This document shows, one piece after another, positions 6,812 to 44,136 of a stretch of 64,000 nucleotides of DNA (positions are counted from its first letter, which is position 1; each line of letters starts with the position of its first letter). The notes beneath the pieces are model-generated. The model saw nothing but the letters and a program-made list of their open reading frames with translations, did no database searches and had not been told where the DNA came from. The stretch is from positions 12,028,001 through 12,092,000 of the forward strand of contig NC_086109.1 of the NCBI RefSeq assembly GCF_963921235.1. The letters run 5' to 3'. The position numbers and the translations under genes were made by a program. Source of the DNA: Mobula hypostoma. Lineage: Eukaryota.

Positions 6812-7130
6812 CATCCTATATGTGTAGACATAAATAAACTCTCAGATCCAGTCCTTGTGTTGTAGTTCCACAGCTGTACCATCCTGTATCTCCAAAGCAA
6901 AGATCTTCCATAGTAACAGTAAATTTTCTCTGTTCCTGGTTGTCTGTGATTGACACTCGTCCCCTTTGTCTGTGTTGCTACTCGTTTCCACTAAAACTGA
7001 ACTTGTTTATTCCATCTGTGGCACTGATACTTGCTGTGTGAGCATTATGTTTCTTCATAGTGACAATCGATCTTGATCACGCTTCCCACAGCTCTTTTTA
7101 AATCTCCCTCTGCCCAAAATGCACCTGAAA
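6812..7130 (-). pseudogene. Decayed IgV exon, CD300/pIgR/MDIR-like pseudogene
   Basis: ctcag|TTTCAGGT acceptor and G|GTAGGT donor. Reads (V)SGAFWAEGDLKRAVGSVIKIDCHYEET*CSHSKYQCHRWNKQ...[32 protein letters not shown]...LHI*D. It has two in-frame stops and two 1-nt deletions (319 vs 321 nt), and the conserved KYWC Trp is now Gln. Confidence 0.92.
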
Positions 7131-15723: not shown

Positions 15724-18700
15724 CTATAAAAGCAAAAGTGAAATTATCAGATTGATTGACACAGGGAACCATGCAATACTGCATGATTCTATGTGCCTGT
15801 GACTTTGCACTCATTGCACTGTTACAAACACATGCTTGTGCATTGGGCAGTAAAGTGCACTTTGACTTTGATTTACATTTCATGTGGGCACCTTGCAACA
15901 GAATTCTGTCTGAAACACAGTGTCCAATATATTTTCCTGTCGAGTACAGGACTTCATTCTACACATGGGCAGAGCGTGAAAGCCTCCTTACAGTATATCA
16001 TCTTCATGCAACTTTGTTTTGACAAAAGGTTAAACGTTCATATGTGAATGTTTTTTCCCTTTAAATGATCAGTATATTTGAATTAAATTGGAGTGAATGA
16101 GAATGAGAGGTATTGCACCTTGATAGAGGTGTAGTAGATGATAAGAGGCGTAAATCTAGTGCATAGCCAGAGACATTTTCCAAGGGCAGAAGTGTCTCAT
16201 ACGAGGGGGCATAATTTTAAGTTGATTGGAGGAACACATTGGGGAGACGTCAGAGGTAAGATTTTACGCAGAGGTTGTGGGTGCATGGAACGTCCTATCA
16301 GGTGTGGTGGTAGAGGCAGATACATTCGCAGCATTTAAGAAACTCTCAAAAAGATGCATGGATCACAGAGAAGTTGAAGCCCATATAAGAAGGAAAGGTT
16401 AGAGTAAGTTAAGAGGCCAGAACAACATCATAGACCAGATTCCATGTATTGTGCTGTAATGCTCTATGTTCTATGTTGTAATTCATGAAAACCATTCGGG
16501 AGCATCTACTGACCTGGACTTACCTTTTTATCTCTCGTGAACCATGTGACAGCGATAGTGCAGATCGCCAGCAGAGCAAAGAACAGCCAGCGTCCCACTT
16601 TCCATATCATGTAACTGAACAAAGGGGAAGAGATACAGAATCAGTGGGAGAAGAGGAAACACCTTTGTATTTCAAATATTTACCTCCTGGTTCCTCTGTG
16701 AAATCAGTGAAGTGGAGCAATAAAAGCAGCAAGGCCAGGGAAGTTCAGCTGGGAGATTAATTTTACGCTGGACTGAGGGAGGGAAGATAATCTATGATCA
16801 TCATTTGGAGATACAATTGCGGAAACACATACTGTATGCTGCGACAATAGATAATGTAGATAGATTTAGAAATGGCAAGGATCGAAATAATGAGGTTGGG
16901 TAACGATGAGCCTGGGGTTAATGTAATGTCATTGCATGGTACAATGATTTATAACAGTTAGCTATACCATTGTGGTTTAGTTCCTGCCACTATTTGTAAA
17001 GAGTTTGTACATTCTCTCTGAGACTGCATGAGGTTCCTCCGGGTGCTCCGGTTTCCTCCCATATTTTCAAGACATATGGTTGATGGTTAGTCGCTTGAGG
17101 GCATGCTATGTTGGCTCTGGAAGAATAGAAACACTAACAGACTGCCCAGCACAATCTTTGCTGGTTGGATTTGATGCAAAGTGATGCATTTGTCAGGAAA
17201 TGTAGATGAGGCTTGACCAAAATCAAGCAGCAGAGACAATTTTGCAGTAAATGCTACTCTACTAATAGACTGCAAAATAACAAGTCATGAGGTGCCATAA
17301 AACATGAAAGAGCGGAAAGTAAACACAACAAGCAAGCGAGGGATTGAAGGCTAGGAACAATTTGTTGAGGCCATCTGGTTTGATGAGTGAACAGGGACTG
17401 TGGATGAGAACTGGGTTAAATAGGCTGCAGGTAATGAGCCTAGAATGAGTGGCAGGTGAATTCTATTAGTTAGGTAAAGATTGGGAGGTTCCTGCATGTG
17501 CAGGCCTGACAGCATTTCAATGTATGTTTCAATGTACATGTGACAAATATAGACAAACTTGACAAAAGAGGACACAGCTCTTTGGAAGTTCGACAACGAA
17601 TCCTCGCAGACAGATTTTGTATGAAAGCTGATAAGTGATCCATAACTTATTGAAGAATGGAGTTGGGGAATGAAATACACAGACAAATAAGGATAATCAA
17701 AAAAAAAATCATAAAAGTAATCGGGGCATCTCAAAAAATCTCAGTATTCCTTGGGCACCATGCAGCGTAGTGGTTACCACGATGCTATTACAGCTTGAGG
17801 TGTCAAAGGTCAATTCTGATGTCTTTTGTGAGGGATCTCTATGTCCTCCCTGTGGAATGCATGGGTTTTCCCTCGGTGCTCTGGTTTCCGCCCAGAGTCT
17901 AGGGATGTATCAGTCAGTTCGTTAATTGGTCTTTGTAAATCATCCTGTGATTAGGCTTAGGTTAAATTGGGGGTCACTGGGTGGTGCAGTTCAAAGGGCT
18001 GGAAGGACCTATTCCACACTGTATCTCAGTAAATAGAATAAAGAAATAAATACAGTGGTAGGTCTGGAGATGGGGGAAGCAAGATCAATAATGTATAAGG
18101 GGCTCACTCGTAACACAATGGCTAAAGAGACCATGAAGGGAATTTGCAAATTTGAGCATTTAGAGCAAGGGTTCCAACCTTTTTTATGTCAGGACTAATA
18201 CCATTAAGGACTGGGGTCATGGACCCCAAGTTGTGAACTCCTGATTTAGAGGATAAATAACCCAGAACATGTAGGGAAGTTAAGATGAAGTGAGCTACAT
18301 AAAATGCATTTTATGATGATAATAGAGAAGGAAACAAATAAGAAGAAAATCAAATATGTAAGGGAAAAGCACATAGAACATAGAATAGTACAGCGAAGTA
18401 CAGGCTCTTCAGCCAAACATGTTTTATCAGCTCTTTAACCTATTCCAATATTAATCTAACCCTTCCCTCCCACATAGCCCTTCATATTTCTTACTTCATG
18501 TGCCTATCTTAAATCTTCCAAACGCACTTGTCTCTACCAGTACCCCAGCAGCACATTTCAAGCACTTGCCACTCTCTGTGTAACAGACCTTCCTCTGATA
18601 ACCCATTATACTTTTCCCGAGACCTAACAGTATGTCCACTTATATTAAAGCTCAAAGTTCAATGTAAACATATACCTCAGGCTATACAACATTGAGATTC

Positions 18701-21700
18701 ATTTTTCTTGCGGGCATAGTCAATAAATCTATAGAATAATAACCATAACAGAATCAATAAAAGACCACCAAACTTTGGTGTTCCACCAGGGTGCAGAGCA
18801 CAGCAAACTGTGCAAACACATAAAGAAAGAAATAATAATAAATATATTAGCAATAACAATCAAGAATATGAGATGATGAATCCTTGAAAGTGGGAACATT
18901 GCATGCAGAAAAAACTCAAGTATCGATACTATTCAATTTACTAATGCCTCCTATCATCTTATACACCTCTATCAAGTCACCTCTTAACCTCCTTATGTCC
19001 AAAGATAAAATTCCTAGCTCACTCATCCCATCCTCATAAAACATGTTGTCTATACTAGGCAGCTTCCTGGTAAATCTCTTCTAAAGCTTTTCCATCTTTC
19101 CTATATGGAGTGATTCGAACTGAAGACAATACTTCAAGTGTGGACGAACCAGAGTTTTATAGAGCTGCAACAATTACCTCAAGCCTCTTAAATTAACTTA
19201 TATGACTAATGAAAGCCAACACACAATGTTCTTTGTTAGCCACCCTATCAACCTGCATGGCAACATTCTGTTTATGTCTGGGGGCAAAGGTCTTTAGGCA
19301 TACCAAGACAAGATAGGGAGGCAAACGAAAGATTCTAGGGTGACATCTTCTATTGGACTGCCTGAGCCAAATTGTCTTTTTACTTTAACATATCTCCAAG
19401 GTAACCCCATTTTAATGCTGTGTAGTCCAGAGCAATAATACTGACCTCACCCATGCCCACTCCCCAGGAACATCTTTCCTGCAGATGCAGTGACCAGCAT
19501 TGTTACCTTAACCGACCATGAAATTTGCCATCAGGGTCACATCAGAGTTGGTCATGGCAAGGCAAAGCAGCATTGCTGAGATTTGACAAATACAACCGAC
19601 ATCAAGCCGTACATCCTCTTAGGGGTGGCAAAGGGAGGGATCTGCTCTTATTTCTCAACAAGCAAAGCAGCCTGATACAAATCCAGCACTCTCTCCATTT
19701 TGATAAGTGAGATTCTAAAATAACGCTGTCAACTTTCATGTTTAAATCAACACAAGATATTTACCTTGGAGCCTCAGGATTGAAATGTGTGAGAAAGAGC
19801 AGTGTATAGGCCTCTCCCATTATTTCAGTGTGTTTGAAGTCAATACTCTCACAGGTACAACGCCAGCAAAGAAAGGTGGGTGTACCACCCTCCTCCTGCC
19901 CCTCCCATTCCCCACCCTCCGCAAGCCAGCACCACCAATAACATCACATATCTCGTAGGGCAGTAGTGTCAATCAAAACATTGACAAATGAGAACATTGT
20001 ACCTTTTGGCAGAAATGGATTGTATGTTTTTTCTTCGAGTATCATTGAAATTCATTTCTGAAGTTTCAGAATGTGAAGTCCTCGCTGAATCTGTTACAGA
20101 AGTTTCAGAATGTGAAGTCCTCATTGATTCTGTTACAGAAGTTTCAGAAATGTATCCAGATTCTGTAGAGATAAGTCATAGTCATAGTCATAGTCAAAGT
20201 CATACTTTATTGATCCCGGGGGAAATTGTTTTTTGTTACAGTTGCACCATAAATAATTAAATAGTAATAACACCATAAATAGTTGAATAGTAATATGTAG
20301 ATTATCCCAGGAAATAAGTCCAGGACCAGCCTATTGGCTCAGGGTGTCTGACCCTTCAAGGGAGGAGTTGTAAAGTTTGATGGCCACAGGCAGGAATGAC
20401 TTCCTATGACGCTCTGTGCTGCATCTCGGAGGAATGAGTCTCAGGCTGAATGTACTCCTGTGCCCACCCAATACATTATGTAGTGGATGGGAGACATTGT
20501 CCAAGATGGCATGCAGCTTGGACAGCATCCTCTTTTCAGACACCACCGTCAGAGAGTCCAGTTCCATCCCCACAACATCACTGGCCTTACGAATGAGTTT
20601 GTTGATTCTGTTGGTGTCTGCTACCCTCAGCCTGCTGCCCCAGCACACAACAGCAAACATGATAGCACTGTTGATAAAATCCAGTTTCAACAGCTTCCCT
20701 GTGCAAGTAGATGAGAAGATAGCTTGCAGAATAATGACAGCAGGTTGTGTGTTTGGATTTCCAGAAAGCATTTGATAAGGTCCTACACATGTCAGATTAA
20801 AAATTAGAGAACTAATATGGATAGAGAACCAGTTGGCAGACAGAATTCAGACAGCAGGAATGAAGAGCTCTGCTTTTGACTGGCAGTGAGTTTATAGAGG
20901 GAAACTGTTGTATTCAGTGTTATAAACCCAATCATCTCATTGTATATCAATAACATAGTCCAGAGGAATTAAATGCAATATATCAAGTTTGCAGAGGGCA
21001 CAAAGTCAGGTGACAATGTGTACTGTGAGGAGTTTCTTAAGCTTGATTTGGACTGGTTCAGAGAATCAGCAAATGAATGGCAGATGCATCATTCTGTAGA
21101 CAAATGTGAAGTGATCCACTTCAGTGTGAGCAGTCTTAGTTCAAAGATTTCTGCTTATTTTAGAGTAAAAAAACATACAAATATTCATCAATCTACAAAC
21201 GTAAATAAAGAGCTGAGAAATGATGCTAAAGGGAAATCAATGCTAAAGGATGTAATGTAAAGGAATAAAAAGAAATGAAACATAGTGCTTCTGAAAAATC
21301 CATCACTTTTATCGATGAGATAAAGAAAATTTCTTAGATAGTGATTAATTAATTGATAATTAAAACAATTACATCATGTGGGTAATGTGCTAAATCTTAG
21401 CCAATGAAAAATGACAGAAGTGATAAACTATTTGTTTAGTTGCTATACCTCTTTCTGCCAGTGAGATTGCCAGTATTTGCTCTGATGGTCAGATATCTGT
21501 CACATGTTTGGAGGGTCTTGAGAGAAAGTGTTTGGTTTCTGTGACCTGCTTCAGCAAGGGAGTACTTTGGTGCTGCTGTTTGCATGGAGGCAGTGGGTGA
21601 AGCCCAGAAGTCTCAGGAAGGTGGATGTCCACACAAAGGAGCTGGAGGAACTCAGCAGGTCAGGCAACATCTCTGGGGGAAAATGCACGTGTGATGTTTC

Positions 21701-23776
21701 TGACTGAGATGCTTCACCAGGACTGGAAAGAATGAGGGGCGAGGATTGAATAAAAGGGTGGGGAGAGGAGGAGGAGCATAAGCTGACAGCTGATAGCTGA
21801 ATCTAGGTGAGAGGAGGAAGGCAGGAAGGTGGGATGGAGCAAAAAAGAGTATGATAAATTGGGAGGTGATAGGCGGAAGAGGCAAAAGGTTAAAGAAGGA
21901 GGAATCTGTTTGGAAAGGACAGTAGACTATGGAATAGAATAAGTAGGTGGGGCACTAGAGGGAGAAAGTGTGGGCACAAGGGCAGTGGAGGGGAATGACA
22001 AGGAGTAAAAGGGCAAGATGGATAAAGGAAAACAAAAGGATTCTGATGGGACAAGATCTCATCAGATTTCACTTAATCTGATTCCCACCGGTAATAGGTG
22101 GATGAAGAGGCTGGATGTTTCGGAGTGGATGGTCAGTGGGTTCTGGGGGTGGGGGCTCAGAGCACATTTATGGGGATACAGGTGGGGGTGCGGGTTAGGA
22201 GGGACTGATTGAGATAGGCCAGGGATTGGACTGGCCTGCTTTGGAAGAACTGAATGCAGTCTGTTGAGCTCTGGGAAATGATTCCCTTTTTATGGTTTTC
22301 CGGTACTTAGCCCATGAGCAACAGGATTCTCGCTGATCTGTTATGGCTGGATTATTAGTTTTACTCTGAATGCAAACCTCTGATAGGGTGACATTCCATA
22401 TGTTTCTGAGGCAGGAAAATTGTGCTGATCCTCCCAATAGAAATTGGTGTCCATCAGTGGGTCAGACCCCACACTGGGTGATTCCCTGATTCCTGTTCAC
22501 TCCTCACAAGACTCTGCACTGCAGTGGTCCCTCGGGATGTGGGAGCTGTCGTAACCCTTCACAGTGAAGACACTGAGCAGATATTTATGTGGGGGCAGAA
22601 AGTAAATCCGTGGTAAATGTACCAACAGATTCCTGTAGATATAGGCGGAACATTGGACAGTGACCATGAATTGGGTGAGATGAACATGAGTTGGGTTTCC
22701 TGACTCCTGACAACTCATCGTAAGGCTCTGCCCTGTTGCTGAGCCTCAGGATATCAATGCTACCCTGAACATTCCCAGAGAAAACTTGGATCAGACATTT
22801 CAGAGGAGACATAAAATCAGTCACTGCACAACATACCGTCAGATACTTGCAGATGTACGTTAAGCATTGGATCATAACCTGATGTTGCAATTGCACAGCT
22901 GTACCATCCTGTATCTTCAGAGCGAAGATCCACCATTGTAACTGTAAATATCCTCCGTTCCGGGTTATCTGTGATTGATACTCGTCCACGCTGTCCGTGA
23001 TGCCCATTTGTTTCCACTAAAACTGAACAATGACGACTCCATCCATGGCACCAATACTTTGTGTGTGAGCTGTACATTGCTTCATAGTGACAATCGATTG
23101 TGATCGCTCTTCCCACAACTCCTGTTACACTTTTCTCTGCCCACAATGCACCTGAAACTGAAGAGAACATGTTTCCGTAAATCAGAATCAGGTGTAATAT
23201 GAACAGCACATGTTGTGAAATTTGTTAATTTGTGGCAGTACTACAATGCAATACAGGATAATATAGAACCAAAAACTGTCCATTGCAGTATTTATACACG
23301 AGGGCTGATTGATAAGTTCATGGCCTGGGGTAGAAGGAGATGAGCTATTAACTTCAAACTTTCCGCGTTATCAGTCAAAGAGTTGAACTGCACGTGCATG
23401 TAACGAGAGTGTCTTGGACCTCCAGGTGGTCCAGAGCAGGGGTGATTGATACGTTTGTGGCCTAAGGTAGAGGGAGATGAGTTATACAGCTCTCGTTACA
23501 TGCAAGTGCAGTTCAACTCTTTGAGTGAAAATGCAGAAGGTTTGAAGTTAATAACTCATCTCCTTCTACCCTAGGCCACAAACGTATCAATCACCCCTGC
23601 TGTGGGCTACTTTCTGGAGGTCCAAGACACCGACTTCTATAAAGAAGGGATCCTATGCTCCACGACTGCTGGACTAAGTGTGTAAATGTAGGAGGGGACA
23701 ATGTTGAAAAATAAATGTGCTAGGTTTTCTAAAATTGACTCCTTCTACCTTAGGCCACAAACTTATCAATCATTCC

Positions 23777-23826
<50 letters not shown>

Positions 23827-26800
23827 ATATATATAAAATAGTTAGATTAAATATGCAGTGAAAAAACAGAAACAAAAATATGTGACAAAGTGTTCATGGG
23901 TTCACTGTCAGTTCAGAAATCGGATGGCAGAGGGGATGTAGACCCTTGGGATATTGGAACTGTCCTGACCCTTCGCAGTGAAGACACAGAAGATATTTTA
24001 GTGGAGAACAGAAAGTAAAGCCCTGATAAATGTACCATCAGATTCTTGAAGATATAGGTGGAATATTGGACCATGACCATGAATTGGGTGAGATCAACAT
24101 GAGTTGGGTTTCTTGTCTGCTGCGTATTCCTAGTAGGACTCTGCACGACTGCGGAGCCTCGGGGATATCAATGATACCTTGGCCGTTCCTAGAGAAAACT
24201 TGGATCAGACATTTCAATAGAGACATAAAGTCAATCACTGCGTTACATACCGTCAGACACTTGCAGATGTACGTTAACCATTGGGTCATAACCTGATGTT
24301 GTAATTGCACAGCTGTACCATCCTGTATCTTCAGAGCGAAGATCCTTCATTGTAACAGTAAATATCCTCCGTTCCGGGTTATCTGTGATTGATACTCGTC
24401 CACGCTGTCCGTGATGCTCGTTTGTTTCCACTAAAACTGAACAATGACGACTCCATCCATGGCACCAATACTTTGTGTGTGAGCTGTACGTTGCTTCATA
24501 GTGACAATCGATTGTGATCGTTCTTCCCACAACTCCTGTTACATTTTTCTCTGCCCACAATGCACCTGAAACTGAGGAGAACATGTTTCCGTAAATCAGA
24601 ATCAGGTGTAATATCAACAGCACATGTTGTGAAATTTGTTAACTTTGTGGCAGTACTACAATGCAATACAGGATAATATCGAACAAAAAACTATCCATTG
24701 CATTAATAATATACGAGGGATGATTGATAAGTTTGTGGCCTAAGGTAGAAGGAGTCAGTTTTAGAAAACCTAGTACATTTATTTTTCAACATAGTCCCCT
24801 TCTACATGTACACACTTAGTCCAGCAGTCGTGGAGCATACGCATCCCTTCTTTGTAGAAGTGGTTCACACCAGTGGTGATTGATAAGTTTGTGGCCTGAG
24901 GTAGAAGGAGATGAATTATTAACTTCAAACATTCTGCATTTTCACTCAAAGAGTTGAACTGCACGTGCATGTAACGAGAGTGTCTTGGACCTCCAGGTGG
25001 TCCAGAGCAGGGGTGATTGATAAGTTTGTGGCCTGAGGTAGAAGAAGATGAGTTATACAGCTCTCGTTACATGCACTTGCAGTTCAACTCTTTGAGTGAA
25101 AATGCAGAAGGTTTGAAGTTAATAACCCATCTCCTTCTACCTCAGGCCACAAACATATCAATCACCCCTGCTGTGGGCCACCTTCTGGAGGTCCAAGACA
25201 CCGACTTCGACAAAGAAGGGATCCATATGCTCCACAACCGCTGAACTAAGTGTGTAAATGTAGGAGGGGACTATGTTGCAAAATAAATGTGCTAAGTTTT
25301 CTACAATTGGCTCCTTCTACCTTAGGCCACAAACTTGTCAATCAACCCTTGTGTGTGTATATGTATTAAGTAGTTAGATTAAATATGCAGTGAAAAAACA
25401 GAAACAAAAATATGTGACAAAGTGTTCATGGGTTCACTGTCAGTTCAGAAATCGGATGGCAGAGGGGATGTAGACCCTCGGGATATCGGAACTGTCCTGA
25501 CCCTTCGCAGTGAAGACACAGAAGATATTTTAGTGGGGAACAGAAAGTAAAGCCCTGATAAATGTACCATCAGATTCTTGAAGATATAGGCGGAACATTG
25601 GACCACGACCATGAATTGGGTGAGATCAACATGAGTTGGGTTTTTTGACTGCTGCGTATTCCTAGTAGGACTCTACACTACTGCGGAGCCTCGGGGATAT
25701 CAATGATACCTTGGCCGTTCCTAGAGAAAACTTGGATCAGACATTTCAATAGAGACATAAAGTCAATCACTGCGTTACATACCGTCAGTTACTTGCAGAT
25801 GTACGTTAAACATTGGGTCATAACCTGATGTTGTAATAGCACAGCTGTACCATCCTGTATCTTCAGAGCGAAGATCCTTCATTGTAACAGTAAATATCCT
25901 CCGTTCCGGGTTATCTGTGATTGATATTCGTCCACGCTGTCCATGATGCTCATTTGTTTCCACTAAAACTGAACAATGACGACTCCATCCATGGCACCAA
26001 TACTTTGTGTGTGAGCTGTACGTTGCTTCATAGTGACAATCGATTGTGATCGCTCTTCCCACAACTCCTGTTACATTTTTCTCTGCCCACAATGCACCTG
26101 AAACTGAGGAGAACATGTTTCCGTAAATCAGAGTCAGGTTTAATATCAACAGCACATGTTGTGAAGTTTGTTAATTTGTGGCAGTACTACAATGCAATAC
26201 AGGATAATACAGAACAAAAAAAAACTGTCCATTGCAGTATTTATATATATTGAATAGTTAGATTAAATATGCAGTGAAAAAACAGAAATAAAAATAAGTG
26301 ACGAGGTGTTCTTGTGTTCAATGTCCATTCAGAAATTGGATGCAGAGGGGACGAAGCTGTTTCTGAAATTCTGAATGCATGCTTTCAGGCTTCTGTACCT
26401 CTTTCCTGAAGGTAACAATGACAAGAAGGCATGTCCTGGGTGGCAGAGGTCCTTTTTGAGGCACTGTTTCTTGAGGATGTCTTGTAAACTGTGGAGTCGA
26501 GTATCCGTGATGGGTCTGACTAATTTGACAACTCTCTGCAGCTTACTTTGATGCTGTGCAGTATCAGCGTTCCCTCCCGCTCCCCCCCCCCACCCGGCCC
26601 ACATCCCCAAATACCAGACAGTGACGCAGCTAGTCAGAATGCTCTCCACAGTACATATGTAGATATTTAGGTGACATACCAATTCTTCTCAAAATCCTAA
26701 TTAAACACAGCCACTGTCTTGCCTTCTTCACAGCTGCATCAATTTGCTGGGGTCAGATTACGTCCTCAGAGATACTAATGCCCAGTAACCTGAAATTGCT

Positions 26801-29800
26801 CACTCTCTCCACTTCCAATCCCTCTACAAAGACTGGTGTGTGTACCCTCCTCTTACCTTTTCTCAAGGCCACAATCAGTGAGTGCAAGGACGTTGCCACA
26901 ACACCTCTCCACTTGCTGGTATATCTACTCCTGCACACCCTCTCATTTCCACCTGATATTCTGCCAACAATGGGTGTATCGTCAGCAGATTTATAGATGA
27001 CATTTGAGCTGTGCCCAGCCACTCTGTCAGGGGTGTAGAGAGAACATGAGCAGCGAGCTAACCACACGTCCCTGAGGTGAACCACTGTTGATTGTCAGTG
27101 AGGTGGAGTTGTTATTTCCAGATTGAGGTCTTCCATTTGCAGAGGGAGGTACAGAAGCCCAGGTTCTATAACTCTTCAAAAAGCACTGTAGGAAGGACGG
27201 TGTTAAACACTGAGCTATAGTGAATAAATAGCATGCTGACATAGGTATTTTATTGTCCAGGTGATTCAAGGCTGCATGGACAGCCAATGAGATTGCATCC
27301 ACTGTAGATCTATTGTGGCAATAGGCAAATTGCTGTGGTGCAGGTCCTGGCCGAGGCAGGAGTTGATTCTGGCCACGACCAGCTTCTCAAAGTACTTCAT
27401 CACGTAGATGTGAGTGCGACTGGATGATAATCATTCAGCCAGCTCACACTGGTGTTCTTGGGCACTGGTATAATTGTTGCCCTTTCGAAGCAAGTGGGAA
27501 TTTCTTGCTGTAGCAATGAGAGATTGAAAATGTCTTTTAACTTTTTCAATCTCTCGAAATTTCTTGAGTGGACAAAAAGAAACTGCTTCGCAAACAACTT
27601 TCTGGAGCAACTCACAAAGCAATGGAGGAAATCAGTTGGTCAGCCAACATCTGTTGCAGTTTCAGGTCGGAAACCTATGTCAGGTCAATAACCTCAGCCG
27701 TCCCATCCCCTGACAGATGCTGAAGTCCTGACCCACTGAGTTCCTCCAGCTGATAGTTTGTCACTCCAAATTCTGGAGTCCACAGATCTTTGTATCCTCA
27801 AAATCTTTTCAATATTCAGCGTGAATATCCTGGCTGTGCTGGTGAATATCCATCCCTTTACAAAGACCCCAATCAGACATTCACCCCTGTTTGTGGTCAG
27901 AAGGTAGGAGGATTGGCAGTCACCAATGTTTGGCTTATACCCTTGCCGTGGAACAGTTGCATCTTCAATGCGTGGCTTCTAACGGTATCTCCCAGCTTTC
28001 TACTCAGCTTCTTCCTCAGATCCCAACTTTTCCAAGGACATTCAGTGCATGTATTCCCCTGAATGGTGAGAGACCACAGACTGAGGGAGACAAGAGACAC
28101 CGTCTACTTCTTGGGGAGCAGGGTGAGGGGAGGGGTCATTGAGGGCAGTTGATTTCTATTCACCTGAAATTTGAGGGCAGAAGAATGTACTATATATACA
28201 GAAAATGTTGAATCCCAAAATAACATTAGGGTCTTCATACATTCTGGTTTTGTTCTTGGCAAAAACGGACATTGACATATGTCACCAGAATTTCCTGTCA
28301 ACCAAAAAATAAAATATTCAGTCCCACTTCTGTTTTCCTGGAGCAGGATCATAGAACTTATGACTTAAGAGGCCATTCAGCCCTTTCTTCAGTACTGGTT
28401 GAAGAAGCGCTGTATGTTCTGGTCCTCCCTCTAACACTGGGTCCTTTGCCCGGCAGGTGACAGCACTTCAGATACACCTTCCAGGCTCAGTTTACTGTGC
28501 TGAAGGTTCCTGACTCTACCAACTGTTCAGGAAGAGCATTTCAGAATGCTACCGCTTACTCACTTCTCCATGGATCATCACCTTGTGGTGGTGGAGAGGC
28601 TTGTGATTTCCTGACATCCTGGGAGCGATGCCATCCGGTATGGTCCTCCATGGCAGAAAGGTCAAGGGGGAAGTTCCAGTCAAAGATTAATCTAAACAAG
28701 ACCTTGACAGTGGAGCCAATGAAAGATGACTAGTAGTGTTCCATAATGATCTGTGCTGGAACAACTTATTTTTACTTTATATGTCAATGACCACTTATTT
28801 TTCCTGTTTCATTCCTGTAGAATTAGGTAGCATGCCTGCAGGGTTAGTGCTTTGTTCAGGGTGTCAGATGTGGGAATCCTGGGAGACTTCCAGCCTCCCT
28901 GATGGTCACATCTGCACCAGGTGCACCGAGTTGCAGCTCCTCAGAGACCGTGTTAGGGATCTGGAGCTGCAGCTTGATGACCTACTGCTTATCAGGGAAA
29001 GTGAAAAGGTGATAGACAGGAGCTACAGGGAGGTAGTCATCCCTAGGCTACAGGGGTCAGAAAGCTGGGTCACTGTCAAGAGAGGGAAGGGAAATGCCCA
29101 GATAGTGGAGAGCACCCCTGTGGCTGTCCCCCTCAGCCACAAATATCTTGTTCTGGATGCTGTTGAGGGGGATGACCTGACCGGGGATGCCCACGGTGAC
29201 CGGGTCTCTGGCACTGAGCCTGGCACTGTTGTGCAGGAGAGAAGGAGGGAGAAGAGAAATGCAGTAGTCGTGGGGGATTCCTTAGTCAGGGGAACAGACA
29301 GGAGATTCTGTGAGCCTGACAGAGATACCCGCATGGTGTGTTGCCTCCCAGGTGCCAGGGTACGGGATGTCTCGGATCGGGTCCTGAATATTCTAAAGGG
29401 GGAGGGTGAGCAGCCAGTTGTCTTGGTACATATTGGTACCAATGACATAGATAGGACAAAGGAGGAGGTCCTGAAGAGAGATTTCCAGGAGCTAGGAAGG
29501 AAGCTGAGAAGCAGGACCTCCAGTGTAGTAATCTCGGGATTGCTACCTGTGCCACGTGCTAGCGAGGGCAAGAGTAGTCGGATCAGGCAGATGAATGCCT
29601 GGCTGAGAGACTGGTGTAGGGGGCAGGGCTTCAGATTCTTGGATAATTGGGATCTTTTCTGGGGGAAGTATGACCTGTTCAAGAAGGACAGGTTACACCT
29701 GAACCCGAAGGGGACCAATATCCTGGCGGGAAAGTTTAATAGAGCTGTTAGGGAGGGTTTAAACTAATTTGGCAGGGGGATGGGAACCGGAATGATAGAG

Positions 29801-32800
29801 CGGAGGAAGGGTAAAACAGAAATAAATCTAAGATAGTGAGCAGTAAAGATGTCAGGAAAGACAGGCAGGTGATGGGGCAAATTTGTAGCCATTGGGATGA
29901 GTTGCAGTGCAATAAAGTTGCAGTGGAATCAAAGCAAAAAGTATCAAATACTGGTCTTAAGGTGTTGTACTTAAATGCACGCAGCATAAGGAATAAGGTG
30001 GATGATCTTTTTGTACAGCTACAGATTGGCAGGTGTGATATTGTGGCCATCACTGAGACGTGGCTAAAGGATACATGTCTCTGGGAGCTGAACGTCCAAG
30101 GATACACGGTGTATCAGAAGGATAGGAAGGTAGACAGAGGGGGAGGGGTGGCTTTATTGGTAAGAAATGATATTAAATCATTAGAAAGAGGTAATGTAGG
30201 ATTGGAAGGTGCAGAATCTTTATGGGTTGAGCTAAGAAATAGCAGGGGTAAAAGGACCCTGATGGCAGTTATTTATAGGCCTCCAAACAGCTGCAGGGAT
30301 GTGGACTACAAATTACAACTGGAAATAGAAAAGGCTTGTCAGAAGGGCAGTGTTATGATAATTGTGGGGGATTTTAACATGCGAGTAGATTGCGAAAATT
30401 AGGTCAGCACTGGATCTCAAGAGAGAGAATTTGTAGAATGTCTGCGAGATGGCTTTTTAGAACAGCATGTTGTTGAGCCTACTAGGGGATCGGCTGTACT
30501 GGATTGGGTATTGTGTAATGAACCGGAGGTGAAGGAACCCTTAGGAGGCAGTGATCATAATATGATTGAGTTCACTGTGAAATTAGAAAAAGAGAAACCG
30601 AAATCTGTGTCGGTATTTCAGTGGAGTAAAGGAAATTACAGTGGCATGAGAGAGGAACTGGCCAAAGTTGACTGGAAAGAGACACTGGCGGGAAAAACAG
30701 CAGAGAAGCAGTGGCTGGAGTTTATGCAAGAAATGAGGAATGTGCAAGACGGGTATATTCCAAAAAAGAAGAAATTTTCGAGTGGAAAAAGGATGCAACC
30801 GTGGTTGACAAGAGAAGTCAAAGCCAAAGTTAAAGCAAAAGAAAGGGCATACAAGGAAGCAAAAATTAGTGGGAAGAGAGAGGATTGGGAAGTCTTTAAA
30901 ACCTTACAAAAGGAAACTAGAAGGTCATTAAGAGAGAAAAGATTAACTATGAAAGGAAGCTAGCAAATAATATCGAAGAGGATACTAAAAGCTTTTTCCA
31001 AGTATATAAAGAGTAAACGACAGGTGAGAGTAGATATAGGACCGATAGAAAATGATGCTGGAGAAATTGTAATGGGAGATGAGGAGATGGCAGAGGAACT
31101 GAACGAGTATTTTGCATCAGTGTTCACTGAGGAAGACAGCAGTATACCGGACACTCAAGGGTGGCAGGGAAGAGAAGTGTGCGCAGTCACAATTACGACA
31201 GAGAAAGTACTTAGGAAGCTGAATAGGCTAAAGGTAGATAAATCTCCTGGACCAGATGGAATGCACCCTCGTGTTCTGAAGGAAGTAGCTGTGGAGATTA
31301 CGGAGGCATTAGCGATGATCTTTCAAAAGTTGATAGATTCTGGCATGGTTCCGGAGGACTGGAAGATTGCAAATGTCACTCCGCTATTTAAGAAGGGGGC
31401 AAGGAAGCAAAAAGGAAATTGTAGAACTGTTAGCTTGACATCCGTAGTTGGGGAGTTGTTGGAGTCGATTGTCAAGGATGAGATTACAGAGTACCTGGAG
31501 GCATATGACAAGATAGGCAGAAATCAGCATGGATTCCTTAAAGGAAAATCCTGCCTGACAAACCTATTACAATTTTTTGAGGAAATTACCAGTAGGCTAG
31601 ACAAGGGAGATGCAGTGGATGTTGTATATTTGGATTTTCATAAGGCCTTTGACAAAGTGCCACACATGAGGCTACTTAACAAGATAAGAGCCCATGGAAT
31701 TACGGGAAAGTTACATACGTGGATAGAGCATTGGCTGATTGGCAGGAAACAGAGAGTGGGAATAAAGGGATCCTATTTTGGTTGGCTGCCGGTTACCAGT
31801 GGTGTTCCGCAGGGATCAGTGTTGGGGCCGCTTCTTTTTACATTGTACATCAACGATTTAGATTATGGAATAGATGGCTTTGTGGCTAAGTTTGCTGACG
31901 ATACGAAGATAGGTGGAGGGGCCGGTGGTGCTGAGGAAACGGAGAGTCTGCAGAGAGACTTGGATAGATTGGAAGAATGGGCAGAGAAGTGGCAAATGAA
32001 GTACAATGTTGGAAAGTGTATTGTTATGCACTTTGACAGAAAAAATAAACGGGCAGACTATTATTTAAATGGGGAAAGAATTCAAAGTTCTGAGATGCAA
32101 CGGGACTTGGGAGTCCTCGTAACGGATACCCTTAAAGTTAACCTCCAGGTTGATTCAGTAGTGAAGAAGGCGAATGCAATATTGGCATTCATTTCTAGAG
32201 GAATAGAGTATAGGAGCAGGGATGTGATGTTGAGGCTCTATAAGGCGCTGGTGAGACCTCACTTGGAGTACTGTGAGCAGTTTTGGTCTCCTTATTTAAG
32301 AAAGGATGTGCTGACGTTGGAGAGGGTACAGAGAAGATTCACTAGAATGATTCTGGGAATAGGAGGGTTAACATATGAGGAACGTTTGTCTGCTCTTGGA
32401 CTGCATTCCTTGGAGTTTAGAAGAATGAGGGAAGACCTGATAGAAACATTTCGAATGTTAAAAGGCATGGACAGAGTGGATGTGGCAAAGTTGTTTCCCA
32501 TGATGGGGGAGTCTAGTACGAGAGGGCATGACTTAAGGATTGAAGGGCGCCCTTTCAGAACAGAAATGCGAAGAAATTTTTTTAGTCAGAGGGTAGTGAA
32601 TCTATGGAATTTGTTGCCATGGGCAGCAGTGGAGGCCAAGTCATTGGGTGTATTTAAGGCAGAGATTGATAGGTATCTGAGTAGCCAGGGCATCAAAGGT
32701 TATGGTGAGAAGGCAGGGGAGTGGGACTAAATACGAGAAAATGGATCAGCTCATGATAAAATGGTGGAGAAGACTCGATGGGCTGAATGGCCTACTTCTG

Positions 32801-41800: not shown

Positions 41801-44136
41801 TGAGTAACAGGGAAAGATTGAAGAGGTTCGCACTGTATTCTTTAGAATGTAGAAGATTGCTAACTTCCAGCAAGATGATGGTGTAAATGGTCACAGTGGC
41901 TTCTATGGGGTCACTAAAAGGTGTTACTGTCGTACCTAAATGTACATATAATGATCACAAGCTTCTACTATGCATTAACAACTCGAAGGACTGCAGGTCT
42001 ACACCATTAGCGAGTTGCTCACTGGCAGAGGTAAGGAAGGAGCCACGCAAGGTGCCGCTGCCTGAGTCAATGTAGCCGACATGGTCACTTTTCTTGTGAT
42101 AGCAGGACCACCTTGGACATTGTTAATATGGTATGCCACAAGTTCTATTCGCAGATTTATTGGATGTGAGCAAGGGCAGATGGAAAGAGCCGATTCTTTG
42201 GCCGTAACGAGGACTAGGCCTGAAACCATGGTGTCGCCTGCTTGCAGCCGCCCGGACTGAGAGAGCAAAGCCGATGCGCGTCACTGGGAATGGTGTGGCA
42301 CAGTGTCCAGAAAGGAGTCGGAGCTGCCCTCCCAGGATTTCACTCAGCAGAAGACAAGCTCTGACGTGGCTGACTGCAGATCTTTCAGCGACATTGAATG
42401 GGCTTGGGCCTCAAGCTGTGGGTCTCTTGCTTTTTGGTCATTGGAGTTGAGGCATTCGAGCCACTGAGCTACTGGGGGCGGCATAGCTCATTTGTGGGAT
42501 GGAAGATTTAAAATGGACTGAGGGGTCTGGACTATATACATATATATTTGTCTGGTTGTGTTTTGTATATGCGAGGACTGGGTCTCAAAGCCACGGATTC
42601 GCCTACTGGGAGTTGGGTGTCAGGACGAGGACTGGGCCTTAAAGCCACAGTGTCACTAAGCGGGTGTTGGGGGCCTGTCAACAGATGATATCAGTGGGCT
42701 GGGGTGTCTGAGCTTTTAAAAGACATTTAGATCGGGACCTGAATGTGGAGAAAATGGAAGGATATCGATATTGTGCAGACAGAAGGGATAAGTTTAGTTG
42801 GCAATTTGATTACTAATTTAATTAGTTCAGCACAATATTATAGGCCGAAGTACTGTTCTATGTTCTATTTGATCTCCTTACAGTCTTTTTCTGCCCCATT
42901 AACCATCCAAATGCCCCTAGGGTGAAAATCTTTCCTCCTTCCTATCAATCACCTGGTCAATTTCACCCCATCTGCTGGTGTCTTCGCCACATACCCTGCA
43001 TTTGAGTCCACATTGTCAAAGAGTACTGAACATCATCGAACCTCACGAGCAATCATATCCCCCAAATGCTACTATGTTGATGGCATCTTTTAAGTGGGGC
43101 AATGAATGTTTAAGGAAAATATTTCTCAAATTCCCTAACTGAACTCTACAAACATCCCCACCTGGAATTACTCAGTAAAACTATGATTGAAGACAATAAA
43201 TACCGGCACTGAGCCTCTGCAGGGCGAGCGTCCGTGACAAGCTTTTTAAAAAATGGGTAAAAGGGAAAAATTACAGGGTGCTGCTGAATAAAACAATTGT
43301 TCAGAGTTTGAGGAAGTGAATGAGAAGGAAATGGATTCTGAGTGCAAGATCAGCCCTCAACCCACACAGAAATGAAGAACAAGACATTTCAATATCAGGA
43401 ACAGCTGTAAAAACTGCAAAAACTTATTTTTCATGTATAATTCCTATGCTGATTTTAGTGAGTACAAGGCAGCATTAAAATCATGTTTCATGGATGGAAA
43501 GGGTGCCTTTGCATTTTATAGTGCAAACTTTTACAAATTAACTGTTCTCTAGGCAGCAACATTTTCTGCCACCATTATCCTCCACACTGGTGCCACACCA
43601 GGACCAGGACGTGTACTCAACTCAATACACTTCTCCTGTACACCCACAACTACCCGCCCCTGCCCCCACGAGCCCCAGTGCAGGGCCTCCAACGGGAGCA
43701 CCTTTTTCCTCCATAGATACTGCTGGACCCATACAGTACTCTAAGCATTGTGTCTGTGCTTCCATACACCAAAAGAGTTGAACCTATTTATGGAGTATTT
43801 TCTGTCTTTACATATCTGCACATACCTTACCATCTCTGCTACTGAAACGGAGCACTAGACCCGAATTAACACTGATCATTTGAATGACAAATAAATGGCA
43901 GATGTTGGAAATCTGAGACAAAAACAGAATGTGCTGGGAATACTGTGTATGTCAGGCTGAATCTCTGGGAAGTGAAACAGGATCAAAAGGTCTTGGGTCT
44001 GAAACATTCACTGTTTCATTTCCACGGGTACAGCCTGACCAGCTGAGTATTTCCTGCATTTACCAGTCTCTGTAATGTCCCGTGCCGGCAGTCACTCACC
44101 GGGCAGTGAATAGATGAGAAGAACTGGAATCCACAT
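15634..44136 (-). CDS. Multi-exon CD300/pIgR-like (MDIR-type) receptor with 3 IgV domains, putatively activating, ~450 aa
   Basis: Hand-spliced: join(44100-44136, 25783-26103, 24251-24571, 22837-23157, 20003-20162, [16684-16695], 16524-16614, 15634-15723) = 1353 nt. All introns are GT-AG, phases are compatible and there are no stops. Confidence 0.8.
16524..16614 (-). CDS. Transmembrane exon ([30 protein letters not shown])
   Basis: ccctttgttcag acceptor, AAG|GTAAGT donor, phase 2-to-0; hydrophobic helix followed by a basic stop-transfer; Lys/Arg at the N-terminal end of the helix. Confidence 0.88.
16684..16695 (-). CDS. Candidate 12-nt micro-exon (AGGAACCAGGAG; adds R-G-T-R before S-Y-M)
   Basis: gatttcacag acceptor and GAG|GTAAAT donor; frame-preserving; the 69-nt intron to the TM exon is borderline short. 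Confidence 0.4.
16955..17260 (+). mobile_element. V-SINE-like element
   Basis: Core gtttgtacattctc...gggtgctccggtttcctcccata. Confidence 0.65.
17755..18050 (+). mobile_element. tRNA-derived V-SINE-like element
   Basis: A-box-like gcgtagtggtt head; core ggttttccctcggtgctctggtttcc; tail ctgtatctcagtaaata. Confidence 0.7.
20003..20162 (-). CDS. Ser/Thr-rich stalk exon ([53 protein letters not shown])
   Basis: ctctacag acceptor, AG|GTACAA donor, phase 1-to-2 links IgV to TM; internal 39-nt tandem duplication; paralog at 4251-4359. Confidence 0.85.
20175..20670 (-). mobile_element. Rex1/Babar-type LINE 3' fragment with (TATGAC)n tail
   Basis: ORF 20331-20771 AVVCWGS...HPLH...[13 protein letters not shown]; AATAAA at 20206-20211; absent from the paralogous site at ~4370. 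Confidence 0.85.
22837..23157 (-). CDS. IgV exon D3 (membrane-proximal)
   Basis: 321 nt, phase 1-1; [13 protein letters not shown]...IDCHY...[11 protein letters not shown]...DTGWYSC...LQVSD. Has the canonical V-set Cys/Trp plus the extra C-C' Cys pair typical of the CD300/pIgR/TREM family. Confidence 0.95.
23299..23779. mobile_element. Mariner-derived MITE (481 bp) inside a Rex fragment, intron D2-D3
   Basis: TIR CGAGGG.TGATTGATAAG... / ...CTTATCAATCATTCCTTG; transposase C-terminal remnant ([13 protein letters not shown]); inserted in a TA-rich site. Confidence 0.85.
23778..23822. repeat. (TG)n microsatellite
   Basis: About 22 TG units at the MITE right end; only a few units in the paralogous intron at 25350. 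Confidence 0.95.
24251..24571 (-). CDS. IgV exon D2
   Basis: 321 nt, phase 1-1; 8 nt differences from D1 and 12 from D3 by manual count. Confidence 0.95.
24714..25351. mobile_element. Mariner-derived palindromic MITE (638 bp), intron D1-D2
   Basis: TA|CGAGGGATGATTGATAAG TIR; ~155-bp inverted arms each carrying the transposase tail ([14 protein letters not shown]). Confidence 0.85.
25783..26103 (-). CDS. IgV exon D1 (N-terminal)
   Basis: 321 nt, phase 1-1; joins the leader to give [25 protein letters not shown]. Confidence 0.95.
26125..27536 (-). mobile_element. Rex1/Babar LINE, 5'-truncated and degenerate
   Basis: IFNLSL...[12 protein letters not shown]...[10 protein letters not shown]; ADDTPIVG; [11 protein letters not shown]...[18 protein letters not shown]; (CTGATT)-type tail ~25-30 nt from the D1 acceptor. 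Confidence 0.88.
28832..29767 (+). CDS. CR1 ORF1p (zinc finger, coiled coil, SGNH/GDSL esterase), 311 aa
   Basis: CSGCQMW...CTRC; VVGDSLVRG; HIGTNDI; DRLHLN; ATG at 28832. Confidence 0.88.
   Translation: MPAGLVLCSGCQMWESWETSSLPDGHICTRCTELQLLRDRVRDLELQLDDLLLIRESEKVIDRSYREVVIPRLQGSESWVTVKRGKGNAQIVESTPVAVPLSHKYLVLDAVEGDDLTGDAHGDRVSGTEPGTVVQERRREKRNAVVVGDSLVRGTDRRFCEPDRDTRMVCCLPGARVRDVSDRVLNILKGEGEQPVVLVHIGTNDIDRTKEEVLKRDFQELGRKLRSRTSSVVISGLLPVPRASEGKSSRIRQMNAWLRDWCRGQGFRFLDNWDLFWGKYDLFKKDRLHLNPKGTNILAGKFNRAVREGLN
29836..32730 (+). pseudogene. CR1 ORF2 (APE + RT), broken by a stop at ~30400 and a frameshift at ~30960
   Basis: [42 protein letters not shown]. Confidence 0.92.
32833..33665 (+). 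mobile_element. Older CR1 3' fragment abutting the CR1 tail
   Basis: Degenerate KFVNDMKI...[13 protein letters not shown]...; ends cctatatcttatgg. Confidence 0.8.
34925..38077 (+). mobile_element. Second CR1 (different subfamily), 5'-truncated within ORF1; ORF2 frameshifted
   Basis: FLDNWALF...DGLHLN end of the esterase; [10 protein letters not shown]; SPGPDG; QGSVLGP; 3' tail gtactattctatgttc. Confidence 0.92.
38120..39625 (+). mobile_element. Gypsy LTR-retrotransposon pol fragment (RT, integrase), degenerate
   Basis: HLDDLKVFG...KCQFC; LHD...KTYGLLK...YWP; MDFL...[20 protein letters not shown]; TKPYH.QG. Confidence 0.85.
39630..40900 (+). mobile_element. CR1 RT fragment
   Basis: LNAFFASVF...FPGPEKMFP...[13 protein letters not shown]. 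Confidence 0.82.
40979..41403 (-). mobile_element. Young CR1 3' end, (TTTCTATG)n tail
   Basis: [28 protein letters not shown]; near-identical to 54344-54749 and 62797-63193. Confidence 0.92.
44100..44136 (-). CDS. Leader (signal-peptide) exon [12 protein letters not shown]
   Basis: acaATG (A at -3); 37 nt, phase 1; CCG|GTGAGT consensus donor; completed as VSG|ALW by the IgV exon. Confidence 0.88.

What the first reader, a model, noticed from the sequence alone, without database searches (positions are those of the whole stretch)
23158..26350. Step-by-step history of the triplication: D2 is an unequal-crossover chimera
Seen: both internal introns carry the same novel junction (Rex 'gcagagggga'+'tgtaga'+'ccct(c/t)gggat' at ~23936 and ~25468) and a mariner MITE at the same TA site. 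The Rex copy upstream of D1 continues uninterrupted with an empty (TA)n site at ~26240. D2's exon and downstream intron match D1, while its upstream Rex/MITE flank matches D3 (the post-MITE sequence is essentially identical). Diagnostic bases switch at about 24575-24601. Inference: single-V gene, then duplication with a breakpoint in the Rex element, then MITE insertion, then misaligned crossover giving three domains. The same mechanism predicts one-domain reciprocal alleles and further expansion, so domain number may be polymorphic.
Basis: partly seen in the sequence, partly recalled or inferred. Interest (0 to 1): 0.7.

Follow-up and report, generated by a model that had tools for sequence, protein, structure and literature searches.

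The report
Immune-receptor exon triplicated by unequal recombination

Summary
The sequence facts hold. Three tandem units of about 1.4-1.5 kb on the minus strand each carry an intact 321-nt Ig V-set exon. Both inter-unit joints are the same novel junction. Two units carry one composite mariner-type MITE at the same TA site, and the third has an empty site. Informative sites show a mosaic: 63:7 on one side and 2:14 on the other, with 0 of 10,000 permutations reaching this.

The four-step history is only partly right.
- The downstream intron groups D1 with D2: 3% between them against 19% to D3.
- The MITE and the LINE-tail piece group D2 with D3.
- The exon plus its 5' flank (about 460 nt) is shallow and star-like in all three copies. 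dS is 0.059 for every pair, and flank divergence is 5% against 18.5% in the intron (p=4e-5).

So at least one gene-conversion step is needed. The switch cannot be placed at 24576-24601. The 2-lnL support interval runs from 24243 to 25368.

The 'tgtaga' filler is not needed, and the 'Rex' label is untested. D3's MITE later lost 154 nt and gained a (TG)n run. The junction also occurs in a second organism about 2.5% diverged. Copy-number polymorphism could not be tested.

The mechanism is textbook, so interest is modest.

The parts
25783..26103 (-). V-set exon D1 (321 nt, phase 1-1; acceptor cctcag|TTTCAGGTG, donor GACG|gtatgt)
   Evidence: Pfam V-set E=2e-14. The ORF is intact. The acceptor at 26103 is used in a V-to-V spliced contig (joint 26103->24251). 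The leader exon ends in phase 1.
24251..24571 (-). V-set exon D2
   Evidence: Pfam V-set E=9e-15. It differs from D1 at 8 nt and from D3 at 12 nt.
22837..23157 (-). V-set exon D3
   Evidence: Pfam V-set E=3e-13. It carries 6 derived changes of its own when polarised with the pseudo-V exon.
25470..25782 (-). Intron piece i1, downstream of D1, up to junction J
   Evidence: It is 3.2% from i2 and 18.5% from i3.
23938..24250 (-). Intron piece i2, downstream of D2, up to junction J
   Evidence: It is 19.5% from i3. In the first 80 nt, 7 sites are derived and shared with i1.
22524..22836 (-). Intron piece i3, downstream of D3. Unit homology ends at about 22524.
   Evidence: Three-way alignment and blastn.
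25461..25480 (.). Junction J between unit 1 and unit 2 (LINE-tail end joined to the intron start)
   Evidence: A contig of organism B (X5) bridges it, covering 25375-25634.
23929..23948 (.). Junction J between unit 2 and unit 3, the same sequence apart from one T/C
24712..25355 (.). Composite nested mariner-type MITE M2. Outer arms are 24713-24861 and 25204-25352; the inner palindromic element is 24860-25181; it holds five TIR copies.
   Evidence: Inverted repeats I1 and I3, TIR scan, contig starts at 24712/24713.
23297..23822 (.). MITE M3, the same composite. It lacks the 154-nt outer left arm, deleted between direct TIR copies, and is followed by an expanded (TG)n at 23784-23822.
   Evidence: The M2/M3 alignment shows 35 differences in 478 nt, a 154-nt gap and a 40-nt gap. 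A single-copy contig of X1 covers the deletion joint at 23235-23344.
26240..26250 (.). Empty (TA)n target site in unit 1
   Evidence: Alignment.
26104..26343 (-). LINE 3' tail inside unit 1: f1 at 26104-26244 and r1 at 26245-26343. It is duplicated as f2 (24572-24711) plus r2 (25361-25468), and as f3 (23158-23296) plus r3 (23829-23936).
   Evidence: blastn. Depth is repeat-level from about 26100 upward, and other genomic copies join 26148 to 26316.
26344..27650 (-). Unduplicated remainder of the 5'-truncated, decayed LINE. The ORF2 C-terminal ORF is 26329-26682.
   Evidence: ORFs. Atlas neighbours are clusters that carry PF09004, score 0.91. Pfam finds no RVT_1.
24252..24711 (.). Homogenised tract (exon plus 5' flank), given in unit 2 coordinates. 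The same tract lies at 22838-23296 and 25784-26244.
   Evidence: All pairs are 3.6-4.3% apart, dS is 0.059 for all pairs, and the site pattern differs from both flanks, p=6e-4 and p=4e-3.
44099..44135 (-). Leader exon of the same gene ([12 protein letters not shown], ends in phase 1)
   Evidence: tblastn with ray CMRF35-like proteins and the sequence itself.
16524..16614 (-). Transmembrane exon, with an Arg in the membrane span
   Evidence: tblastn E=5e-11 and the sequence itself.

Best explanation
A CD300/CMRF35-like receptor gene of a ray, on the minus strand, gained its three V exons in stages.

(1) A 5'-truncated LINE already lay just upstream of the single V exon. Its tail ends within a few tens of bases of the acceptor.

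(2) An old non-homologous tandem duplication copied about 1.0 kb: 240 nt of LINE tail, the exon and 313 nt of intron. This made junction J, with at most 1 nt of microhomology or filler. Neutral divergence since then is about 18.5%.

(3) A composite mariner-type MITE inserted at a TA in the LINE tail of the downstream unit.

(4) Gene conversion homogenised the exon and its 5' flank between units. The tract ends at the MITE on one side and about where the diverged intron begins on the other.

(5) Misaligned homologous recombination, most likely within that newly identical tract of about 460 nt, produced a third unit. The middle unit therefore carries the MITE and LINE-tail piece of the downstream unit and the intron of the upstream unit.

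(6) Later, D3's MITE lost 154 nt between direct TIR copies, a (TG)n run grew, and the intron-J-LINE-tail stretch may have been converted once more.

Shown: the anatomy, the mosaic and the three age classes. Inferred: the order of steps 4 and 5, and crossover rather than conversion as the maker of the mosaic.
For: - The junction is identical at both boundaries, and the composite MITE starts in register in both units.
- The mosaic is significant: chi2 42.4, with 0 of 10,000 permutations reaching it.
- The intron gives ((D1,D2),D3): 3.2% against 18.5-19.5%, with 7 polarised shared-derived sites.
- The LINE-tail piece gives ((D2,D3),D1): 1% against 10-11%.
- Exon plus flank is star-like: dS is 0.059 in all pairs, and the exon tree is ((4,3):2,6).
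- The flank is 7/145 between D1 and D3 units against 58/313 in the intron, p=4e-5. Synonymous sites give p=0.002.
- D3's divergence changes rate at 24244, support interval 24244-24310.
- The site pattern in the exon-plus-flank zone differs from both neighbouring zones.
- Unit-specific joints appear in short-read contigs at single-copy depth: f3|M3 and f2|M2.
- All three exons are intact V-set domains in phase 1-1. A contig of run X16 joins a V exon's end to a V exon's start at the splice sites.
Against: - The block that one crossover should have copied as a whole is not of one age. MITE plus flank is 42/598 (7.0%) and LINE-tail piece plus intron plus exon is 19/750 (2.5%), p=1e-4. Without CpG sites p=0.008. 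This needs either a faster-mutating MITE or a further conversion.
- Three sequences and a short outgroup cannot fix the order of conversion and crossover.
- Step 4's boundary falls suspiciously close to the exon/intron border, which could partly reflect selection on the exon.
- All reads evidence comes from short contigs, and those of organism A probably come from the sample the genome was assembled from.
Confidence: 0.72

Rival explanations
1. The mosaic was made by conversion, not by the crossover. The array went from two to three units by an unequal crossover about 7% ago, at a point that has left no readable trace. The middle unit's likeness to D1 in exon and intron, and the near identity of the two LINE-tail pieces next to J, come from a later gene conversion of about 750 nt, about 2.5% ago, between the two junction-spanning blocks.
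For: There are two age classes within the repeated block: MITE plus flank 7.0% against 2.5% for LINE-tail piece, J, intron and exon, p=1e-4. A 108-nt identical run lies next to a MITE that is 7.3% diverged, P=3e-4. The young block is contiguous, 23838 to about 24600 against 25370 to about 26130.
Against: The MITE excess shrinks when the 8 CpG sites are set aside (non-CpG p=0.008); five two-base doublets among its 35 differences may each be one event, which was not tested. The flank excess rests largely on one cluster of four changes at 24693-24708. Synonymous divergence D1-D2 (4/70) is not lower than for the other pairs.
Confidence: 0.2
2. This is the first reader's exact history: duplication, MITE insertion, then one misaligned crossover at 24576-24601, with no conversion. 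The low divergence of D3's exon and flank reflects purifying selection only.
For: The maximum-likelihood single breakpoint lies between 24576 and 24601. The exons are under some constraint, dN/dS 0.28-0.63.
Against: Synonymous sites show 4 differences between D1 and D3 where about 13 are expected, p=0.002. The non-coding 5' flank is 4.8% against 18.5%, p=4e-5. The exon tree shape differs from the intron's, p=0.008. The D2-D3 divergence drops at 24244, not at 24576-24601. Breakpoints from 24243 to 25368 lie within 2 lnL units.
Confidence: 0.05
3. This is an assembly artefact: a two-unit or one-unit locus was wrongly expanded in the assembly.
For: Tandem repeats with high-copy transposon content are hard to assemble, and no long read spanning the array was available.
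Against: The units differ by 3-19% in places, by a 154-nt deletion and by a 40-nt microsatellite. Unit-specific joints occur in short-read contigs at single-copy depth.
Confidence: 0.03

Closest known systems
Human haptoglobin Hp1 -> Hp2 -> Hp Johnson (Hp3) alleles (from my own knowledge; no paper read here confirmed the details)
   Same: It has the same two-stage logic. A first intragenic duplication arises by non-homologous breakage and reunion in introns. A triplication then arises by homologous unequal crossover between the duplicated units. Reciprocal single-unit products are expected.
   Different: In haptoglobin the alleles still segregate and were observed directly. Here only one haplotype is seen, the first duplication is old (about 18.5%), the units have been partly homogenised, and a MITE serves as a built-in marker.
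Copy-number alleles of tandem domain cassettes made by unequal crossover: complement receptor CR1 long homologous repeats, LPA kringle IV-2 (own knowledge)
   Same: Exon cassettes kept in frame can be added or removed by misaligned homologous recombination. They evolve in concert.
   Different: Those arrays are proven polymorphic and their units are larger. Here polymorphism is untested and each unit holds a single exon.
CD300/CMRF35-like and pIgR/pIgR-like receptors of vertebrates
   Same: The exons are V-set domains with the DCxY...KYWC...C pattern. The best hits are named CMRF35-like molecules of rays at 64-70% identity. The number of V domains differs between lineages in pIgR.
   Different: Classical CD300 proteins have one V domain. 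This gene has three nearly identical ones and an Arg-bearing transmembrane exon. No binding of polymeric Ig is implied or tested.
Tc1/mariner-derived MITEs
   Same: There are terminal inverted repeats, a TA target, no coding capacity and a very high copy number.
   Different: This one is a nested composite with four to five TIR copies. The right-hand TA is blurred by a (TG)n run. The family name is not determined.

Membership tests
Tandem array expanded by unequal homologous recombination (NAHR) | All inter-unit boundaries carry the same novel junction | tested here: met
   The junctions at 23936/23938 and 25468/25470 are identical apart from one T/C.
Tandem array expanded by unequal homologous recombination (NAHR) | A derived marker is shared by descent between two units and absent from the third | tested here: met
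   The composite MITE has the same internal architecture and the same start in register in both units. Unit 1 has an empty site.
Tandem array expanded by unequal homologous recombination (NAHR) | The middle unit is a mosaic of the outer units | tested here: met
   63:7 against 2:14 informative sites, with 0 of 10,000 permutations reaching this.
Tandem array expanded by unequal homologous recombination (NAHR) | The two copies of the recombinant block are of one age along their whole length | tested here: not met
   7.0% against 2.5%, p=1e-4. This needs rate differences or a later conversion.
Tandem array expanded by unequal homologous recombination (NAHR) | Reciprocal or other copy-number alleles exist in the population | not testable with these tools
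   Only short Logan contigs were served, and the one read-laying run is used.
Gene conversion / concerted evolution between units | A tract with shallow, star-like divergence is flanked by deeply diverged sequence | tested here: met
   dS is 0.059 in all pairs. The flank is 5% against 18.5% in the intron, p=4e-5. The change-point is at 24244, support 24244-24310.
Tc1/mariner MITE | Terminal inverted repeats and no transposase ORF | tested here: met
   The arms are 149 nt at 89% and 121 nt at 93% complementary. The element is about 640 nt, and no minus- or plus-strand ORF in it resembles a transposase.
Tc1/mariner MITE | TA target-site duplication | tested here: inconclusive
   TA directly precedes the left end in both copies. 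On the right, a (TG)n run lies between the TIR end and the next TA.
Rex LINEs (Rex1/Rex3/Rex6) | Reverse transcriptase assignable to a Rex clade | not testable with these tools
   Pfam finds no RVT_1 in the decayed ORFs. Atlas neighbours carry PF09004. No other copy lies in the window. It is a high-copy repeat with decayed reverse-transcriptase-like ORFs, which I read by eye as a LINE; neither the LINE class nor the clade name is shown by a tool.
CD300/CMRF35-like receptor | V-set domain with closest relatives in that family | tested here: met
   Pfam V-set E about 1e-14. The top hits are CMRF35-like molecules 1-3 of three rays.

The most novel reading that the evidence does not exclude
The three-exon array is a live recombination cassette. 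The LINE tail, the MITE and the repeatedly homogenised exon tract keep enough identity for ongoing unequal exchange. The number of V domains of this activating CD300-like receptor would then vary among individuals or sister species of rays, with 1 to 4 domains, and would be a target of selection. That would be a pIgR-like multi-domain ectodomain caught in the making.
Probability: 0.12. Interest if true: 0.55.

Novelty: new member of a known kind. Interest (0 to 1): 0.3.

Why it matters
This is a well-marked natural example of how an immune receptor gains Ig domains. The MITE, the LINE breakpoint and the diverged intron act as built-in markers, so duplication, conversion and unequal exchange can be told apart within 4 kb. 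For comparative immunology it documents a three-V CD300-like gene in a cartilaginous fish. It also shows that near-identical exons can hide a much older duplication, so dating such events from exons alone misleads. No new mechanism is involved.

Tried and rejected
- Read laying on 21000-26500 with two DNA and two RNA-like runs served only short Logan contigs. Contigs of near-identical units are collapsed or hybrid. For example, X1 record 7 carries unit 2 letters at 25479, 25487 and 25537 and unit 1 letters after that. Neither copy number nor allelic forms could be read, and depth ratios were inconsistent even in the source sample.
- A word search for the f2|M2 boundary found all words in the source sample and none in organism B. 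At about 2.5% divergence, and with four unit-2-specific changes in that stretch, this says nothing about B.
- Pfam on the LINE ORFs found nothing, even at E=10. Rfam found nothing in the window. tblastn found no second copy of this LINE in the window. The 'Rex' name therefore stays untested.
- Literature searches gave general context only. The haptoglobin paper I opened did not describe the triplication allele, so that analogy is cited from my own knowledge.
- Rejected: independent MITE insertions, because the nested architecture and register are the same.
- Rejected: a one-step triplication, because divergence is 3% against 19%.
- Rejected: microhomology between GCAGAGG and GCAGTGG as the origin of J, because the observed junction does not fit it.
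- Considered: MITE excision from unit 1 instead of later insertion. It is not needed, because the LINE-tail piece independently groups units 2 and 3.
Full report
**What is there.**
Between 22524 and 26343 the window holds three head-to-tail units. Start-to-start spacing is 1414 and 1532 nt. The gene runs on the minus strand.

Each unit contains a 321-nt exon: D1 at 25783-26103, D2 at 24251-24571 and D3 at 22837-23157. All three are open. They are flanked by cctcag|TTTCAGGTG and GACG|gtatgt and lie in phase 1-1. Each is a V-set Ig domain in Pfam, with E from 3e-13 to 9e-15.

The nearest database proteins are 'CMRF35-like molecules' of three rays, Hemitrygon, Mobula and Leucoraja, at 64-70% identity. 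The genome is therefore most likely a batoid's.

Using those proteins I located two more exons:
- The leader exon lies at 44099-44135. It ends in phase 1 and reads into VSGALW.
- An Arg-bearing transmembrane exon lies at 16524-16614.

The three V exons therefore sit in one CD300-like gene. A stalk exon must lie in between, but I did not find it.

A contig of run X16 (organism B) joins the last base of a V exon (24251) to 26103, the start of a V exon. That is a V-to-V splice. The tool itself marks this run as possibly DNA.

**Checking the observation.**
Written on the plus strand, the layout is [i3 e3 f3 M3 r3] J [i2 e2 f2 M2 r2] J [i1 e1 f1 r1] R0. The symbols mean:
- i: intron downstream of the exon
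- e: exon
- f: the 140 nt upstream of the exon
- M: the MITE
- r: about 100 nt of LINE tail
- R0: the undivided rest of a decayed LINE

The LINE's ORF2 C-terminal reading frame is 26329-26682. Atlas neighbours of that ORF are chordate clusters carrying PF09004, score 0.91. Pfam sees no reverse transcriptase in the decayed frames.

Both J joints read ...GGCAGAGGGGA-T-GTAGACCCT.... On the LINE side the breakpoint is 12-15 nt from the ORF's stop codon.

That region is about 19% diverged. The lone T may be a CpG transition of the C that follows GGGGA in R0. The junction is thus blunt or has 1 nt of overlap, as expected for a non-homologous first duplication (direct reading).

The MITE is a nested composite:
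- Its outer arms are 24713-24861 and 25204-25352.
- Its inner palindrome is 24860-25181.
- M2 has five TIR copies and M3 has four. All nine in the window lie here, against 0 expected.
- Many genomic contigs start at 24712/24713, which fixes the left end.
- In both units the element begins in register after ...ATA, so it is one insertion copied, not two insertions.
- Unit 1 has the empty (TA)n at 26240-26250.
- M3 lacks the 154-nt outer left arm, deleted between two direct TIR copies, and has about 40 nt more (TG)n.

A single-copy X1 contig covers that deletion joint. All sampled words across f2|M2 are in the source sample's runs. The units are therefore not an assembly duplicate.

**The mosaic.**
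I classed sites as 'U3 odd' (U1=U2) or 'U1 odd' (U2=U3). Left of it the count is 63:7 and right of it 2:14, with chi2 42.4. No permutation of 10,000 reached this.

Divergence by segment:

| Segment | U1-U2 | U2-U3 | U1-U3 |
|---|---|---|---|
| Intron i | 3.2% | 19.5% | 18.5% |
| LINE-tail piece r | 11.2% | 1.0% | 10.2% |

The pseudo-V exon at 6813-7131 served as outgroup. In the first 80 nt of the intron there are 7 changes derived on the common U1/U2 branch, 6 on U3, and none private to U1 or U2. The middle unit is clearly recombinant.

**Where the simple history fails.**
The exon and its 5' flank behave differently from both neighbouring zones.
- All three pairs are 3.6-4.3% apart over these 466 nt.
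- Synonymous divergence is the same for every pair: 4 differences, dS 0.059.
- The polarised exon tree is ((U1:4,U2:3):2,U3:6).
- If D3's exon and flank dated from the first duplication, about 13 synonymous differences would be expected. Four are seen (p=0.002).
- On the same assumption about 27 flank differences would be expected. Seven are seen (p=4e-5).
- Constraint cannot explain a non-coding LINE tail. The exon's tree shape also differs from the intron's (p=0.008).

The rate at which U3 differs from either other unit drops from 19-20% to 4.3% at 24244. The support interval is 24244-24310 against U1 and 24244-24286 against U2. That is at the exon's 3' end, not at 24576-24601.

In a single-breakpoint likelihood profile, every position from 24243 to 25368 lies within 2 lnL units. 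The site pattern of this zone differs from the intron (p=6e-4) and from r (p=4e-3).

So there are three zones, not two. At least one homogenising event, gene conversion or an extra expansion-contraction cycle, must be added.

The tract ends at the MITE and at or just inside the exon's border with the diverged intron. A MITE that one partner lacks and an intron some 19% diverged both look to me like natural stops for a conversion tract; that is inference, not tested here.

A freshly homogenised tract of about 460 nt is also the only long stretch of near identity between units that otherwise differ by 10-19%. That makes it the likely site of the misaligned exchange. Most 'diagnostic' bases inside it would then be later private mutations, not markers of the crossover.

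**A second discrepancy.**
One crossover copies the block [f M r J i e] as a whole, so its two copies should be equally old. They are not:
- MITE: 35/478, or 7.3%
- Flank: 7/120
- r plus i plus e: 19/750, or 2.5% (p=1e-4 against MITE plus flank; p=0.008 for the MITE without CpG sites)
- A 108-nt identical run abuts the MITE (P=3e-4 at the MITE's rate).

There are two possible readings:
- The MITE mutates faster. It has 8 CpG changes and 5 doublets, and four of the flank's U2-specific changes sit in one 16-nt cluster.
- A later conversion of about 750 nt refreshed the two junction-spanning blocks.

In the second case the likeness of D2's intron to D1's could stem from conversion rather than from the crossover itself. 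I cannot separate these readings with three sequences.

**Other organisms.**
Organism B is about 2.2-2.7% diverged in single-copy contigs. It has a contig bridging J, at 25375-25634 with 94 and 165 nt on either side and 3 mismatches. The first duplication therefore predates the split of A and B. That contig also shares the unit-1-private C at 25606. A separate B contig lies on i2. This hints that B has three units too, but depth figures were unreliable even for the source sample. The prediction of one-, two- or four-domain alleles remains untested.

**Comparison with what is known.**
The process is the textbook route. A non-homologous intragenic duplication is followed by homologous unequal exchange and concerted evolution. 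Human haptoglobin Hp2/Hp Johnson and the CR1 and LPA repeat alleles follow the same route (my own knowledge; the papers opened gave no closer precedent).

The gene belongs to the CD300/CMRF35-like group by Pfam and by its best hits. The MITE meets the TIR, size and copy-number criteria of Tc1/mariner MITEs, but the right-hand TA is blurred. Its TIR resembles the Himar1 TIR from memory only. I read the element upstream of D1 as a LINE from its high copy number and its decayed reverse-transcriptase-like ORFs, seen by eye. 'Rex' could not be tested.

**Verdict.**
The triplication arose by misaligned homologous recombination after an old LINE-breakpoint duplication and a MITE insertion. The history includes at least one gene-conversion step, the crossover point is unresolved within 24243-25368, and the age of the first duplication is hidden in the exons. 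This is a new, well-marked example of a known mechanism. Interest is modest.

Noticed in passing
25473-25614 against 25686-25828 (also in units 2 and 3, e.g. 22524-22665): The distal part of each unit's intron is an older copy, about 65% identical, of the exon's 3' end plus the proximal intron. It translates as [15 protein letters not shown], against [15 protein letters not shown] in the exon. Local alignment score is 75, against 21+-3 for shuffles. This is an earlier partial tandem duplication with a period of about 214 nt, and its far end abuts junction J.
   Followed up: partly
6813-7131 (-): A pseudo-V exon of a neighbouring CD300-like gene, with in-frame stops and a frameshift. It is 81% identical to the D1 exon. 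I used it as the outgroup.
   Followed up: partly
16524-16614 (-) and 44099-44135 (-): These are the transmembrane exon (Arg in the span, starts in phase 2) and the leader exon of the same gene. The 18-kb first intron is full of LINEs. A stalk exon between 16615 and 22836 must exist but was not found.
   Followed up: partly
28736-30402 (+): Another LINE lies on the plus strand. Judged by eye only, its ORF1 has an SGNH/GDSL-like esterase motif and is followed by an AP-endonuclease-like ORF.
   Followed up: no
21552-21735: A short repeat of extremely high copy number: summed contig depth is about 6e5 in X1, with contig breaks at 21630-21676. It is probably a SINE or MITE core.
   Followed up: no
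24693-24708: Four unit-2-specific substitutions fall within 16 nt, directly next to the MITE's left end (CAGTATTTATA has become CATTAATAATA). This may be a single complex mutation.
   Followed up: no
P0001 (Hemitrygon akajei gene model): The model starts with a partial V domain followed by a full one, so multi-V CD300-like genes may occur in other rays.
   Followed up: partly
   Followed up: no
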